The position numbers and the translations under genes were made by a program. Positions 14,911 through 18,120 of a stretch of DNA of 45,102 bases are shown piece by piece (within the stretch, counting starts at the first letter, position 1; every line of letters begins with the position of its first letter). The notes under the pieces were generated by a model. It searched no databases. It saw only the letters and a program-made list of their open reading frames with translations, and was not told the origin of the DNA. This DNA comes from Octopus bimaculoides (taxonomy: Eukaryota): positions 17,047,748-17,092,849 of the forward strand of contig NC_069007.1 in the NCBI RefSeq assembly GCF_001194135.2, read 5' to 3'.

Positions 14911-14999
14911 TTAGTCGCTGTGGACTACCGGGATGTACCTTATCTTTCTGAGAAGGTTAATATAGTGTGTATAACCAACTTTTTGTAGGAAACCAGGAT
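14911..14999 (-). CDS. Probable terminal exon of the secreted protein ((Y)PGFLQKVGYTHYINLLRKIRYIPVVHSD*)
   Basis: Strong acceptor tttttctccattgcag, phase-compatible with the preceding donor (T+AT=Tyr), stop at 14913-14911, AATAAA on the minus strand at 14775-14770. No homology support. Confidence 0.5.
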
Positions 15000-15039
15000 C
15001 TGCAATGGAGAAAAATAACATTGGTGTAGTTTACTGTAG

Positions 15040-15225
15040 CTCATCATTGTCTTTGATGTCATTATCATCATCATTATTGTCATCAACATCATTGTCATCA
15101 ACATCATTGTCATCAACATCATTGTCATCAACATCATTGTCATCATCATCATTGTCATCATCAGGATCCTCATCAGCATCATTGCTGTCTTCATTGTCAT
15201 CATCCTCATCCTCATCAGCACCATC
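15040..15225. repeat. (GAT)-derived minisatellite including a 15-bp unit ttgtcatcaacatca
   Basis: Tandem 15-mers within ATC-rich sequence; reads (DDNDV)n on the minus strand. Confidence 0.9.
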
Positions 15226-15229
15226 ACTA

Positions 15230-15583
15230 TTATACTCTAAAAACAGTACTCTACACAACATACTGCCCTCTATGTATCTATACACTCCAGGTTGTACTCT
15301 ATCATACAATATACATCCCTGACATGGGGATACAAATGAAATAAGACAAGTTTTGCATAAATCGGACCACAGGTTCCCGAGATACGCGTTTTTTTCGGGT
15401 ACTATTATAAATAGCCAAACTGGTACATAATGGGAAAAATGCTTTGAAAGTAAGGTACCATTCAAAGTGAACACAAACGGAATAAAACAAGTTTCATGCA
15501 AATTGGACCATGGGTTCCTGAGGTACGCGGTTTTTCAGGTACCCCAAGCTATTGGTAACCCAATAGGTTATGGGTAGTCTAGT
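15230..15583 (+). mobile_element. Non-autonomous Helitron-like element
   Basis: Subterminal hairpin (ctattgg-taac-ccaatag with extended arms) followed by CTAG|T at 15579-15583; internal ~55-bp direct repeats at 15348-15402 and 15489-15542; 5' end uncertain. Confidence 0.5.
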
Positions 15584-16258
15584 AATACATCTATGTTACA
15601 TATATAAAATACATATATATTACATTCTTTTATTCTTTTACTTGTTTCATTTATTTGACTACAGCCATGCTGGAGCACCACCTTAATGGGTTTTTTAGAC
15701 AAAGAAATCAACCCCAGGATTGTAAACCTAGTGCATATTCTATTGGTATCTTTGCTGAACCGCTAAATTATGGGAATGTAAAGACATCAACAGTGGTTGT
15801 CAAGTGATGTTGGGCACACAAATGCAGATACAAAGACACACACGCACATAGATACACACACACACACATATATGATGGGCTTCCTTCAATTTCCATCTAT
15901 CAAATCAACTTACAAGGTTTTGGTCAGCTTGAGGCTATAGTAGATAATTGCCCAAGGTGCCCTGCAGTGGGATTGAACCTGGAATCATGTGATTGGGAAG
16001 CAAGCTTCTTATCACACAGCCACGCCTGCACCTACATATATCAGGCCATAAGTACTGGGGGTTGATAAGGCAGTGCCCCGGCATGGCCACAGTCTAATGA
16101 CTGAAACAAAAGATAAAAGATGCTATCGTTTTGTAGCTTTATCTACTTCGAGTTCCTTCATTAGAAATGATTTATTTCATATCTGTTGAAATTTCTAAAT
16201 TCCTATGACATCAACAGCAACAACAACAACTGACTGAAAATGAAATGGGTTGACTTAC

Positions 16259-16391
16259 AGTAAAGGGAGCATCCACACCTCAATGGATCGTAGAACATTC
16301 CATCAGCGCAGCTACGCATAACGTAGTAGCTGGTATTGAGTTCGAAGTACTTGCCAGGGTCTTCGACACAGGCCTTCATTGAACATGACAC
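16259..16391 (-). CDS. Cys-rich exon resembling a chitin-binding (ChtBD2/CBM14-like) module
   Basis: VSCSMKACVEDPGKYFELNTSYYVMRSCADGMFYDPLRCGCSLY shows the pattern C..DP..Y...C..G..(F/Y)D...CxC. Phase-0 acceptor tttcctctgcaag matches the signal exon; perfect donor gtaagt (phase 1). The domain call is by eye. Confidence 0.72.
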
Positions 16392-17519
16392 CTTGCAGAG
16401 GAAACAGAACATATCTCAAGCATTTAGGGGTTTTTAGAGCAGTTTCTTGCTTTTGTTTTTATAGGTTTATCAGAAGAGAGAAAGAGAGGCAAAGAGACAG
16501 AGAAAGACAAAGAGAGAGACAGAGAAAGACAAAGAGAGAGACAGAGATAGAGTTTGCTAGACACTGTCCCTTCTTCGGTCACTAGAGGTCCTTTTTAATT
16601 TTTTATTACTGATATGACATAATATGTCATATGTGTTTTTATATTGTTTTTATTGTCCTGTCTTCTTAATTGAAAAATAAACAGGTAAATTGACATAATA
16701 CAATGTCTGCAANNNNNNNNNNNNNNNNNNNNNNNNNNNNNNNNNNNNNNNNNNNNNNNNNNNNNNNNNNNNNNNNNNNNNNNNNNNNNNNNNNNNNNNN
16801 NNNNNNNNNNNNNNNNNNNNNNNNNNNNNNNNNNNNNNNNNNNNNNNNNNNNNNNNNNNNNNNNNNNNNNNNNNNNNNNNNNNNNNNNNNNNNNNNNNNN
16901 NNNNNNNNNNNNNNNNNNNNNNNNNNNNNNNNNNNNNNNNNNNNNNNNNNNNNNNNNNNNNNNNNNNNNNNNNNNNNNNNNNNNNNNNNNNNNNNNNNNN
17001 NNNNNNNNNNNNNNNNNNNNNNNNNNNNNNNNNNNNNNNNNNNNNNNNNNNNNNNNNNNNNNNNNNNNNNNNNNNNNNNNNNNNNNNNNNNNNNNNNNNN
17101 NNNNNNNNNNNNNNNNNNNNNNNNNNNNNNNNNNNNNNNNNNNNNNNNNNNNNNNNNNNNNNNNNNNNNNNNNNNNNNNNNNNNNNNNNNNNNNNNNNNN
17201 NNNNNNNNNNNNNNNNNNNNNNNNNNNNNNNNNNNNNNNNNNNNNNNNNNNNNNNNNNNNNNNNNNNNNNNNNNNNNNNNNNNNNNNNNNNNNNNNNNNN
17301 NNNNNNNNNNNNNNNNNNNNNNNNNNNNNNNNNNNNNNNNNNNNNNNNNNNNNNNNNNNNNNNNNNNNNNNNNNNNNNNNNNNNNNNNNNNNNNNNNNNN
17401 NNNNNNNNNNNNNNNNNNNNNNNNNNNNNNNNNNNNNNNNNNNNNNNNNNNNNNNNNNNNNNNNNNNNNNNNNNNNNNNNNNNNNNNNNNNNNNNNNNNN
17501 NNNNNNNNNNNNNNNNNNN

Positions 17520-17561
<42 letters not shown>

Positions 17562-18033
17562 AAATGTGATAACAGGAATAAATGATTATCTTATGAACTT
17601 CATTAGCTTACAGCCGTTTCTGCTATGAGATGCGGTGTACTCATAGTTGAGTGCCAGAGTAACACCTTATCGCTTTATTGGAGCCTTGAATATGAAGTGC
17701 AATTTATTTTTCACAATGCAAAATATATAGATTGATAGCTAGGTAGATAGATACATACATAGATTGATAGATAGAGTGATAGATAGATAGACAGACAGAT
17801 AGAAATAATAGATAGATAGATATAGATAGATGGGTTTGTGTGTGTGTGTATGTATACTTAATATATAACAAACATAGAAAGTAATTTTGTTTTCAGCTGT
17901 TTTTTTCAATTGTTTTCAATTCTATTTTTACTTTTTGGGTATTGTTTCATTTCATTTTCTTTTGAGGTAATAATTTATTTGTAATAATAAAAACACAAAA
18001 ACTGATAAGAAAAGAAGTCTCTCAAAAACTCAC

Positions 18034-18120
18034 AAGTTGTCCAATTTCCTTGGCTTGGACATTGAGTATCAGCAGACACCCAATGAAGAGAATAGCTGAC
18101 ATGGAAGATTTAGGGGCCAT
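18034..18120 (-). CDS. Signal-peptide exon of a small secreted protein (MAPKSSMSAILFIGCLLILNVQA/KEIGQL)
   Basis: Not in the ORF track. ATG in the context caagATGG, hydrophobic core, likely cleavage after VQA, phase-0 donor gtgagt. An upstream acceptor tttcttcag at 18129 implies a further 5' UTR exon. Confidence 0.75.

What the first reader, a model, noticed from the sequence alone, without database searches (positions are those of the whole stretch)
14911..18120. Hidden three-exon gene for a ~100-aa secreted protein with a mollusc-type chitin-binding-like CxC module
Seen: a signal-peptide exon (18120-18034, phase-0 donor) joins in phase to a Cys-rich exon (16391-16259). That exon's phase-1 donor fits a strong acceptor at 14999, followed by a stop and AATAAA. 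The predicted protein is MAPKSSMSAILFIGCLLILNVQA/KEIGQLVSCSMKACVEDPGKYFELNTSYYVMRSCADGMFYDPLRCGCSLYYPGFLQKVGYTHYINLLRKIRYIPVVHSD. Known: peritrophin-A/ChtBD2 domains ending in C..G..F....CxC occur in molluscan matrix proteins such as Pif and BMSP. Inferred: a stand-alone single-domain member in a probably shell-less cephalopod could act in beak, radula, sucker cuticle, stylet or statolith matrix. The mature chain has an odd number of Cys (5), suggesting a disulfide-linked dimer or a missing exon in gap 16713-17519.
Basis: partly seen in the sequence, partly recalled or inferred. Interest (0 to 1): 0.75.

Follow-up and report, generated by a model that had tools for sequence, protein, structure and literature searches.

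The report
Annotated octopus secreted CBM14-like protein
The three-exon gene is real and under strong purifying selection, but it is already in RefSeq (Octopus bimaculoides LOC106882051); it encodes a small secreted protein whose single Cys module has the fold of a chitin-binding (CBM14/peritrophin-A) domain and belongs to a small family found so far only in cephalopods, with no function yet tested.

Summary
The 102-aa product is identical to RefSeq XP_014788095.1/XP_052833158.1 (Octopus bimaculoides LOC106882051), so the gene is not hidden. The O. sinensis orthologue is 96% identical, with dN/dS 0.08 and all 6 exon-3 differences synonymous. The assembly gap lies inside intron 1. That intron is gap-free in O. 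sinensis and holds no plausible extra exon.

The Cys exon encodes one 39-residue module (C-x24-C-x10-C-x-C). An exhaustive HMMER search found the module elsewhere only in cuttlefish/decapodiform proteins, which carry 4-11 or more copies joined by acidic Ser/Asp-rich linkers. The octopus protein has no Pfam CBM_14 hit and lacks the canonical six Cys. Two relatives pass the CBM_14 threshold, and a confident AlphaFold model (pLDDT 87) has only CBM14-fold proteins as its top 14 PDB neighbours.

So "chitin-binding-like" holds for the fold. It does not hold for family membership, and actual chitin binding is untested: EHEP and Der p 23 share the fold without binding chitin. The fifth Cys recurs in cuttlefish modules and does not indicate a missing exon. 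The conserved 30-aa tail weakly resembles ribosomal protein uL15 (E≈0.05), unresolved.

The parts
18034..18120 (-). Coding exon 1: start codon and 29 codons. Residues 1-23 (18120-18052) form the signal peptide MAPKSSMSAILFIGCLLILNVQA. Phase-0 donor GTGAGT at 18033.
   Evidence: Identical to RefSeq XP_014788095.1. Conserved in O. sinensis with 6 differences in 87 nt.
16392..18033 (-). Intron 1. It contains the assembly gap 16713-17519, flanked by (TA)n, (CTAT)n and (CT)n simple repeats.
   Evidence: The O. sinensis intron 1 is 1135 nt, gap-free, and has no plausible hidden exon. The exon-1 and exon-2 blocks are collinear with O. sinensis.
16259..16391 (-). Coding exon 2 (133 nt, phase 0 to phase 1). 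It encodes residues 30-73 plus the first base of codon 74, and so the whole Cys module.
   Evidence: 6 differences from O. sinensis, 4 of them synonymous.
16269..16385 (-). The 39-residue module CSMKACVEDPGKYFELNTSYYVMRSCADGMFYDPLRCGC (C32-x24-C57-x10-C68-x-C70). Predicted CBM14/peritrophin-A-like fold with five short beta-strands.
   Evidence: Spacing is identical to all 31 cuttlefish/decapodiform modules. phmmer E values 7e-10 to 1e-5 to those proteins. AF2 pLDDT 86.6 and Foldseek top 14 all CBM14-fold.
16368..16370 (-). Codon of Cys37, the fifth ('odd') Cys of the mature chain, at module position 6.
   Evidence: Aligned as a one-residue insertion relative to most modules. Two S. esculenta modules (CNRKAC.., CSRKPC..) have a Cys at the same position. 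Conserved in all three Octopus species.
15000..16258 (-). Intron 2. It contains a SINE-like dispersed repeat (about 16041-15631) and a 15-nt minisatellite (15059-15217) that creates a spurious D/N-rich ORF.
14911..14999 (-). Coding exon 3: the last two bases of codon 74 (Tyr) plus residues 75-102 (PGFLQKVGYTHYINLLRKIRYIPVVHSD) and the stop TAA (14913-14911). This is a basic, aromatic-rich tail (pI 9.7).
   Evidence: All 6 differences from O. sinensis are synonymous. Weak similarity to uL15/RPL27A residues 47-76.
14770..14775 (-). AATAAA polyadenylation signal in the 3' UTR.
   Evidence: conserved in O. sinensis.

Best explanation
This is a real gene, already annotated as LOC106882051 of Octopus bimaculoides. 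It encodes a 102-aa secretory precursor. After signal-peptide cleavage, the 79-aa, mildly basic (pI 8.3) protein has two parts. The first is one 39-residue, four-Cys module with a CBM14/peritrophin-A-type fold. The second is a strongly conserved 30-aa basic, aromatic-rich tail. The module belongs to a small family found so far only in cephalopods; in cuttlefish it is repeated 4-11 or more times between acidic Ser/Asp/Glu-rich linkers. The most likely mechanism is inferred, not shown: an extracellular protein that docks onto chitin or a chitin-protein matrix through the aromatic/polar face of its beta-hairpins (Y/F13, YY20-21 in place of the family's GW, and F31-Y32-D33 in the CxxG..F motif). 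The two conserved disulfides would hold the fold, the unpaired Cys37 would be free for a covalent dimer or a cross-link to matrix partners, and the tail would provide a second contact. Shown here: gene structure, conservation and selection, family membership, predicted fold. Inferred: secretion (by rule), disulfide pairing, chitin binding, tissue.
For: The gene model is identical to RefSeq and reproduced in O. sinensis and O. vulgaris. dN/dS is 0.079 for the CDS and 0.039 for the mature chain, and 14 of 18 differences fall at codon position 3, p=1.4e-4. An exhaustive phmmer search of 1.84 billion representatives found only the Octopus cluster and three proteins, two of them traced to Acanthosepion pharaonis, with 3-6 matched stretches each (E 7e-10 to 1e-5). 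All of their modules are exactly 39 aa, as is the octopus module. P0006 and P0007 pass the Pfam CBM_14 gathering score (48.4 and 36.7 bits against 22.1), and CBM_14 is the family most often hit by single modules, 5 of 22. The AF2 module model has pLDDT 86.6. Its Foldseek top 14 PDB matches are all CBM14-fold: CHIT1 CBM14, Aplysia EHEP, Der p 23, Blo t 12, Avr4, tachycitin and Der f 23, with TMq 0.60-0.84 and probability 0.80-1.00, then a drop to 0.16 or less (same picture). The best hit of the profile-versus-PDB sequence search is also EHEP. The relatives also start with signal peptides.
Against: The octopus protein itself gets no Pfam hit at E<=10. All Foldseek E-values are weak (0.07-1.7) because the domain is tiny. 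Only four of the six canonical CBM14 Cys are present. Two of the closest structural neighbours, EHEP and Der p 23, do not bind chitin, and the chitin-contact residues are not conserved even among binders (PMC10619976). No expression, proteomic or binding data could be reached. The tail helix is predicted with low confidence and is not significantly amphipathic.
Confidence: 0.5

Rival explanations
1. The protein has a CBM14 fold but its ligand is not chitin. Like Aplysia EHEP (binds phlorotannin) or Der p 23, it would be a secreted gut, digestive or mucosal protein that uses the scaffold for another ligand or for protein-protein contacts.
For: EHEP, a molluscan protein, is the best PDB hit of the family profile by sequence and is rank 1-2 by fold. 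EHEP and Der p 23 lack chitin binding although they share the fold. The octopus module replaces the family's conserved GW and GT with YY and GM.
Against: The cuttlefish relatives pair the module with acidic Ser-rich linkers, which suggests a mineral/chitin matrix. Aromatic residues are kept at the hairpin positions. There is no evidence on any ligand.
Confidence: 0.25
2. It is a soluble defence peptide of the tachycitin type: a small, cationic, secreted single-CBM14 protein that binds microbial chitin or cell walls and acts as an antimicrobial. The basic tail would interact with membranes.
For: The mature chain is 79 aa with pI 8.3 and the tail has pI 9.7. Tachycitin (73 aa) is among the structural neighbours. 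It is a single-domain protein, unlike the matrix-type repeats.
Against: Tachycitin is only rank 13. The tail's hydrophobic moment is matched by 19% of shuffles and its helix has low confidence. No expression data link the gene to haemocytes or skin.
Confidence: 0.15
3. The model is incomplete. A further Cys-bearing exon is hidden in the gap 16713-17519, or the true product is the two-exon read-through form (UniProt A0A0L8FP97) whose extra Cys restores an even number.
For: The mature chain has five Cys. The read-through model ends ...SLYC and carries the UniProt ChtBD2 name.
Against: The O. sinensis intron 1 is gap-free and has no plausible in-phase exon. Exon 1 joins exon 2 in phase, and the module starts right after the signal peptide, as it does in relatives. 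The read-through tail is not conserved: O. sinensis has substitutions, an indel and an earlier stop. Its Cys codon is simply the T plus the GT of the donor. Exon 3 shows 6 of 6 synonymous changes. Extra Cys at module position 6 or 11 recur in the family.
Confidence: 0.03
4. It is a chance ORF or non-functional annotation artefact.
For: The protein is short, has no Pfam hit and no published function.
Against: dN/dS is 0.08 and differences concentrate at third codon positions. Splice sites and the AATAAA signal are conserved. There are homologues with E down to 7e-10 and a confident fold.
Confidence: 0.02

Closest known systems
Cuttlefish/decapodiform multi-module proteins: Acanthosepion (Sepia) pharaonis CAE1286147.1 and CAE1286153.1, a Sepia esculenta larval transcript (P0021) and an ENA contig protein (P0006). 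All are uncharacterised.
   Same: True sequence relatives (phmmer E 7e-10 to 1e-5). The 39-aa module C-x24-C-x10-C-x-C is the same, with K4, Y/F-x-E, an aromatic residue before R/K-x-C, and G-x-x-F/Y. They also have an N-terminal signal peptide and occasional extra Cys at module position 6 or 11.
   Different: They carry 4-11 or more modules separated by acidic S/D/E-rich linkers and are encoded in single exons. The octopus gene has one module, three exons, no acidic linker, and a basic tail that none of them has.
CBM14 / peritrophin-A / ChtBD2 domains (Pfam PF01607): tachycitin, human chitotriosidase CBM14, fungal Avr4.
   Same: The predicted fold is the same. The C-[PA]-x-G-x-x-[FY]...C motif corresponds to the C4...C5 hairpin of the profile (profile positions about 22-49 matched in relatives). 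Both are extracellular.
   Different: The canonical domain has six Cys (CX15CX5CX9CX12CX5-9C; disulfides 1-3, 2-6, 4-5). Here there are four conserved Cys, with a CxC ending and no C2/C3 pair. The octopus protein has no Pfam hit. Chitin binding is untested.
Aplysia kurodai EHEP (PDB 8IN3/8IN6), which has three peritrophin-A domains.
   Same: It is molluscan and secreted. It is the best PDB match of the family profile by sequence (E 0.1) and is among the two best by fold.
   Different: It has three canonical six-Cys domains and binds phlorotannin/tannic acid, not chitin. Sequence identity is only 16-24%.
Mite allergens Der p 23, Der f 23 and Blo t 12.
   Same: They are small secreted proteins with a single CBM14-like domain, and are top structural neighbours (TMq 0.60-0.78).
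   Different: They are arthropod gut/peritrophic proteins with no detectable sequence relation. Der p 23 does not bind chitin.
Molluscan shell-matrix proteins Pif, BMSP and LamG3/Pif-like
   Same: They contain ChtBD2 domains and occur in molluscs, cephalopods included.
   Different: They are large multidomain proteins (VWA or laminin-G plus canonical ChtBD2). Nothing of that architecture is present here, and none appeared among the homologues.

Membership tests
CBM14 / peritrophin-A / ChtBD2 (Pfam PF01607) | The sequence matches the Pfam CBM_14 profile at or above the gathering score. | tested here: not met
   The octopus protein, its mature form, the read-through isoform and the O. vulgaris isoform all give 0 families at E<=10. 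The octopus module alone gives none. Relatives P0006 and P0007 do pass at whole-protein level (48.4 and 36.7 bits against 22.1), but only through profile positions about 22-49 of 53. P0008 scores 19.4 bits, below the cut-off.
CBM14 / peritrophin-A / ChtBD2 (Pfam PF01607) | Six conserved Cys, CX15CX5CX9CX12CX5-9C, forming disulfides 1-3, 2-6 and 4-5 (PMC10619976). | tested here: not met
   Only four Cys are invariant across 33 modules: C1, C26, C37 and C39 of the module. The octopus fifth Cys is not at a canonical position.
CBM14 / peritrophin-A / ChtBD2 (Pfam PF01607) | The tachycitin-type fold: a small beta-sheet plus beta-hairpin. | tested here: met
   The AF2 module model has pLDDT 86.6 and five strands. 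The Foldseek top 14 PDB hits are all CBM14-fold, with TMq 0.60-0.84 and probability 0.80-1.00, and the full mature chain gives the same result. This is a prediction, not a solved structure, and the E-values are 0.07-1.7.
CBM14 / peritrophin-A / ChtBD2 (Pfam PF01607) | The protein binds chitin. | not testable with these tools
   This needs a binding assay. Fold-mates EHEP and Der p 23 do not bind chitin.
Cephalopod 39-aa four-Cys module family (defined here) | Module of exactly 39 residues, C-x24-C-x10-C-x-C, with significant sequence similarity to the cuttlefish proteins. | tested here: met
   The spacing is exact. phmmer E values are 6.8e-10, 2.4e-8 and 1.0e-5 against a library of 1.84 billion. 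Identity to individual modules is 18-39%.
Cephalopod 39-aa four-Cys module family (defined here) | Tandem modules separated by acidic Ser/Asp/Glu-rich linkers. | tested here: not met
   The octopus protein has a single module and no linker. The D/N-rich ORF in intron 2 is a minisatellite in a non-conserved frame.
Pif / BMSP shell-matrix proteins | A VWA domain (or laminin-G in Pif-like proteins) together with canonical ChtBD2 domains. | tested here: not met
   The protein is 102 aa and has no Pfam domain. No Pif/BMSP-like protein appeared among the homologues.
Ribosomal protein uL15 / RPL27A (exon-3 tail only) | Significant match to uL15 sequences or to the corresponding Pfam profile. | tested here: inconclusive
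   phmmer against PDB: all 25 hits at E<=10 are eukaryotic uL15 at residues about 47-76, best E 0.046 (E 0.056). tblastn of human RPL27A (sequence recalled from memory) has its best hit in the window at exon 3, E 0.078, and 0 of 20,000 shuffles reach the score. The Pfam scan of the tail gave no hit, and the similarity stops at the exon borders.
Secretory protein | A cleavable N-terminal signal peptide. | tested here: inconclusive
   No SignalP was available. The sequence shows a basic n-region (K4), a 13-residue hydrophobic core and V-Q-A at -3 to -1. All relatives have comparable N-termini.

The most novel reading that the evidence does not exclude
The octopus gene is the reduced, single-module survivor of a cephalopod-specific family of chitin/mineral matrix proteins. 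In cuttlefish that family has expanded into long acidic module arrays, which are candidate cuttlebone matrix proteins. With the loss of the shell in octopods, the gene was remodelled into a small capping or cross-linking protein. Its conserved C-terminal exon would have been recruited from a fragment of a ribosomal protein uL15 (RPL27A) retrocopy.
Probability: 0.1. Interest if true: 0.55.

Novelty: new member of a known kind. Interest (0 to 1): 0.3.

Why it matters
For the scan, this finding shows that the first-stage reader can reconstruct a correct spliced gene from raw sequence. It also shows the gene is already in public annotation, so it is not a discovery of a gene.

Biologically, the modest new point is that this 'uncharacterized' octopus protein and a set of unnamed cuttlefish proteins form one small family, found so far only in cephalopods. 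The family is built on a four-Cys, 39-residue derivative of the CBM14 fold.

If the cuttlefish arrays prove to be cuttlebone, gladius or other chitin-matrix components, the octopus single-module gene would be a handle on what happened to shell-matrix genes when octopods lost the shell. It would also be a very small natural chitin-binding scaffold.

Tried and rejected
1. Paralogues in the window: tblastn of each exon found none.

2. Pfam on every isoform and on the tail: nothing found.

3. Profile search of the 5.8-billion-protein collection with the module alignment. The second gave nothing, because a 45-column profile cannot reach significance in that database, so one search was wasted.

4. 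Search with the eight-module cuttlefish protein: it added only one more member, P0021, so the family is small or poorly sampled.

5. A hidden exon in the gap: rejected using the gap-free O. sinensis intron.

6. The UniProt read-through isoform and its sixth Cys: rejected as a non-conserved intron read-through.

7. The D/N-rich ORF in intron 2 as a relic acidic linker: rejected. It is a 15-nt minisatellite whose frame relative to exon 3 differs in O. sinensis.

8. Synteny of the cuttlefish genes with DUS3L: not testable, because the loci obtained hold no DUS3L.

9. An amphipathic helix in the tail: not significant.

10. Literature: no paper holds the gene or protein accessions. The cuttlebone proteome paper (PMID 34468131) is not held, and the cephalopod shell papers that were read discuss only Pif/LamG3-type proteins.

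11. Rfam and tRNA scans of the window: no hits.

12. Reading the disulfide topology from the model: coordinates are not exposed.
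Full report
OBSERVATION. On the minus strand the three proposed exons read exactly as described. Exon 1 is 18120-18034 (ATG plus 28 codons, donor GTGAGT). Exon 2 is 16391-16259 (pyrimidine-rich acceptor ...TTTCCTCTGCAAG|G, 133 nt, donor GTAAGT, phase 1). Exon 3 is 14999-14911 (acceptor TTATTTTTCTCCATTGCAG|A, stop TAA). An AATAAA signal lies at 14775-14770, about 136 nt after the stop, just before the next assembly gap. 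The same signal and 3' UTR are present in O. sinensis.

THE GAP. The window has ten runs of N. The one flagged, 16713-17519, lies entirely inside intron 1, so no reading frame crosses it. The blocks around exon 1 (18543-17980) and exon 2 (16536-16208) match the Octopus sinensis locus L001 in the same order and orientation. In O. sinensis the intron is 1135 nt, has no N, and contains only low-complexity pseudo-ORFs, nothing resembling a Cys module. The O. bimaculoides protein appears under two RefSeq accessions with the same sequence. A missing exon is therefore very unlikely.

NOT HIDDEN. The predicted protein is identical, residue for residue, to XP_014788095.1 / XP_052833158.1, 'uncharacterized protein LOC106882051 [Octopus bimaculoides]'. 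This also identifies the source of the window. Orthologues are XP_036370490.1 of O. sinensis (96% identity, 102 aa) and CAI9741648.1 of O. vulgaris. An older two-exon model, UniProt A0A0L8FP97 (91 aa), is named 'Chitin-binding type-2 domain-containing protein'. That model reads through the exon-2 donor into the intron (...SLY-CKSTHFIFSQLLLLLLMS). Its extra Cys is just the exon's last T plus the GT of the donor. In O. sinensis the read-through tail differs by substitutions, an indel and an earlier stop, so it is an artefact.

REAL AND CONSTRAINED. Between O. bimaculoides and O. sinensis the CDS differs at 18 of 309 positions. Fourteen of these are at codon position 3 (binomial p=1.4e-4). By Nei-Gojobori, dS is 0.24 and dN is 0.019, giving dN/dS 0.079; for the mature chain dN/dS is 0.039. 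All six differences in exon 3 are synonymous. Splice sites are conserved. The aligned blocks that contain the exons, mostly non-coding sequence, are 86-89% identical. The exons are not repeat-derived. No second copy exists in the window, and each exon block hits one syntenic place in the O. sinensis locus, whereas the SINE-like element in intron 2 hits about ten.

WHAT THE PROTEIN IS. Residues 1-23 look like a signal peptide: K4, the hydrophobic core AILFIGCLLILN, and V-Q-A before the cleavage site. This is judged by rule, because no predictor was available. The mature chain is 79 aa with pI 8.3. Pfam finds nothing in any isoform, even at E<=10.

An exhaustive phmmer search of 1.84 billion representative proteins found, besides the Octopus cluster, only three proteins. 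They are P0006 (702 aa, E 6.8e-10), P0007 (728 aa, 2.4e-8) and P0008 (384 aa, 1e-5), each matched in 3-6 stretches. P0008 is an Acanthosepion (Sepia) pharaonis protein, and the P0007 cluster contains another (P0009, CAE1286147.1); both genes lie on one 270-kb contig. A further relative, P0021 (733 aa), comes from a Sepia esculenta larval transcriptome. P0006 is a single-exon ORF on a 30-kb ENA contig of unknown species.

All of these proteins have a signal peptide followed by modules of exactly 39 residues, C-x24-C-x10-C-x-C. There are 8, 8, 4 and 11 copies respectively, separated by acidic Ser/Asp/Glu-rich linkers. In the S. pharaonis locus the module/linker array continues for more than 2 kb beyond the annotated gene. 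The octopus module CSMKACVEDPGKYFELNTSYYVMRSCADGMFYDPLRCGC also has exactly this length and spacing.

The four Cys are invariant across 33 modules, and G29 is nearly invariant (one P0021 module has D there). Also conserved are K4, Y/F-x-E, an aromatic residue before R/K-x-C, and F/Y32. The octopus 'odd' Cys (C37 of the precursor, module position 6) aligns as a one-residue insertion. However, two S. esculenta modules (CNRKAC.., CSRKPC..) have a Cys at the same position, and the first modules of the other cuttlefish proteins have an extra Cys at position 11. Extra Cys are thus a family habit, not a sign of a lost exon.

RELATION TO CBM14/ChtBD2. P0006 and P0007 pass the Pfam CBM_14 gathering score as whole proteins (48.4 and 36.7 bits against 22.1), but only by matching the C-terminal half of the profile, positions about 22-49 of 53. 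Taken singly, 5 of 22 modules touch CBM_14 (best E 0.005) and the octopus module does not. The family profile's best PDB hit by sequence is Aplysia EHEP, E 0.1.

AlphaFold2 (no templates, 28-29 module sequences as the alignment) gives pLDDT 80-89 for the module within the mature chain. For the module alone it gives a mean of 86.6, with five short strands. In both Foldseek searches every top hit is a CBM14-fold protein: human chitotriosidase CBM14, EHEP, Der p 23, Blo t 12, Avr4 from two fungi, tachycitin and Der f 23. Query-normalised TM is 0.60-0.84 and probability 0.80-1.00. After them probability drops to 0.16 or less. The E-values themselves are weak (0.07-1.7), as expected for a domain of about 45 residues.

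The canonical domain has six Cys (CX15CX5CX9CX12CX5-9C; disulfides 1-3, 2-6, 4-5; PMC10619976). From the profile positions matched, I infer that module C26 and C37 correspond to C4 and C5, and that C1 and C39 form a substitute for the N-to-C clamp. I could not check this on coordinates.

The module is therefore best described as a reduced, four-Cys derivative of the CBM14 fold. It works like, or at least looks like, a peritrophin-A domain, but the octopus protein fails two of the family's defining sequence tests.

FUNCTION. Nothing here measures function. The fold, the retained aromatic residues on the hairpins, and the pairing of the module with acidic, probably phosphorylatable linkers in shell-bearing cuttlefish together make a chitin-matrix role the most likely reading. 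The free Cys would be a candidate for covalent dimerisation or cross-linking. I put this at roughly 0.45-0.5.

The main rival, at about 0.25, is a non-chitin ligand. The two closest fold-mates that have been tested, EHEP and Der p 23, do not bind chitin, and contact residues are not conserved even among binders. A tachycitin-like defence peptide is possible, at about 0.15. The tail is basic (pI 9.7), but its predicted helix has low confidence and is not significantly amphipathic. No paper mentions the gene or its relatives, and the cuttlebone proteome paper could not be read.

THE TAIL. Exon 3 is the most constrained part, with 6 of 6 differences synonymous, yet it has no counterpart in the cuttlefish proteins. 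Unexpectedly it resembles residues about 47-76 of eukaryotic ribosomal protein uL15/RPL27A: YyPGflqKVGytHYinLlRkirYiPvVhsD against [29 protein letters not shown]. All 25 PDB hits at E<=10 are uL15 at that position, with best E 0.046. Human RPL27A (sequence recalled from memory) has its best six-frame hit in the whole window exactly on exon 3, E 0.078, and no shuffle out of 20,000 reaches the pairwise score. Against this, the Pfam scan of the tail gave no hit and the similarity ends at the exon borders. It may be an exon captured from an RPL27A retrocopy, or it may be chance. I rate homology at about 0.25-0.3.

CONTEXT. Upstream on the same strand lies DUS3L. Its zf-CCCH exon is at 35230-34613 and another exon at 26543-26172, and the arrangement is the same in O. 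sinensis. The rest of the window is gaps, microsatellites, SINE-like repeats and retroelement fragments. There are no Rfam families or tRNAs.

VERDICT. The chitin-binding-like reading is supported at the level of fold and distant family relation. It is not supported at the level of formal ChtBD2 membership, and actual chitin binding has not been tested. The missing-exon idea is rejected. The useful addition is the definition of a family, found so far only in cephalopods, built on a 39-residue four-Cys CBM14-like module, which links this octopus gene to unnamed cuttlefish module arrays. Interest is modest.

Noticed in passing
window 14914-14999 (minus strand), exon 3: The conserved C-terminal tail resembles residues about 47-76 of ribosomal protein uL15/RPL27A. 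The best PDB E is 0.046, all 25 hits are uL15, and human RPL27A's best six-frame hit in the window is this exon. The similarity stops at the exon borders and Pfam sees nothing. It could be an exon captured from an RPL27A retrocopy, or chance.
   Followed up: partly
window 16203-16259 (minus strand): UniProt A0A0L8FP97, named 'Chitin-binding type-2 domain-containing protein', is a two-exon model that reads through the exon-2 donor. Its sixth Cys is the exon's last T plus the donor GT, and the read-through tail is not conserved in O. sinensis. The UniProt name may therefore rest partly on an artefactual residue.
   Followed up: partly
L005 11143-13386 (Acanthosepion pharaonis contig CAHIKZ030002386.1): The repeats of 39-aa module plus SSSSEEDS-type acidic linker continue for more than 2 kb past the stop of the annotated gene CAE1286153. 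They lie in two long ORFs, one of which partly overlaps a second called gene of 274 aa. The real gene or genes are probably larger than annotated, and their coding sequence has no introns.
   Followed up: partly
window 15031-15501 (minus strand); tandem repeat at 15059-15217: A 156-aa D/N-rich ORF in intron 2 lies in the frame of exon 3 and looks like an acidic linker. It is a 15-nt minisatellite (10.8 copies) whose length and frame differ in O. sinensis, so it is not coding.
   Followed up: yes
window 14978-14979 (minus strand), inside exon 3: The O. vulgaris isoform CAI9741647.1 ends ...YPGFLQKL. This implies an alternative donor (AAA|GTTGGT) after Lys80 and a further downstream exon, giving a variant without the tail. 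The same GT is present in the window.
   Followed up: no
window 34613-35230 and 26172-26543 (minus strand): These are exons of the upstream neighbour DUS3L (tRNA-dihydrouridine synthase 3-like; zf-CCCH region and Dus domain), on the same strand. The DUS3L-to-LOC106882051 order is conserved in O. sinensis.
   Followed up: partly
window about 15631-16041, 20313-20756, 23106-23402, 27272-27658, 35330-35695: Copies of a dispersed SINE-like element whose pseudo-translation contains ...YQIHSQGFGW..AIVEDTCPRCHAVGLNPEPCGWEA.... The copy in intron 2 matches about ten places in the 24-kb O. sinensis locus.
   Followed up: no
window 10744-11142 (-), 19800-20078 (-), 8380-8688 (+): ORF fragments that look by eye like retroelement reverse transcriptase / RNase H and a LINE ORF. 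They were not checked against Pfam. Part of the 8.5-9.5 kb region is conserved with O. sinensis at 87-96%.
   Followed up: no
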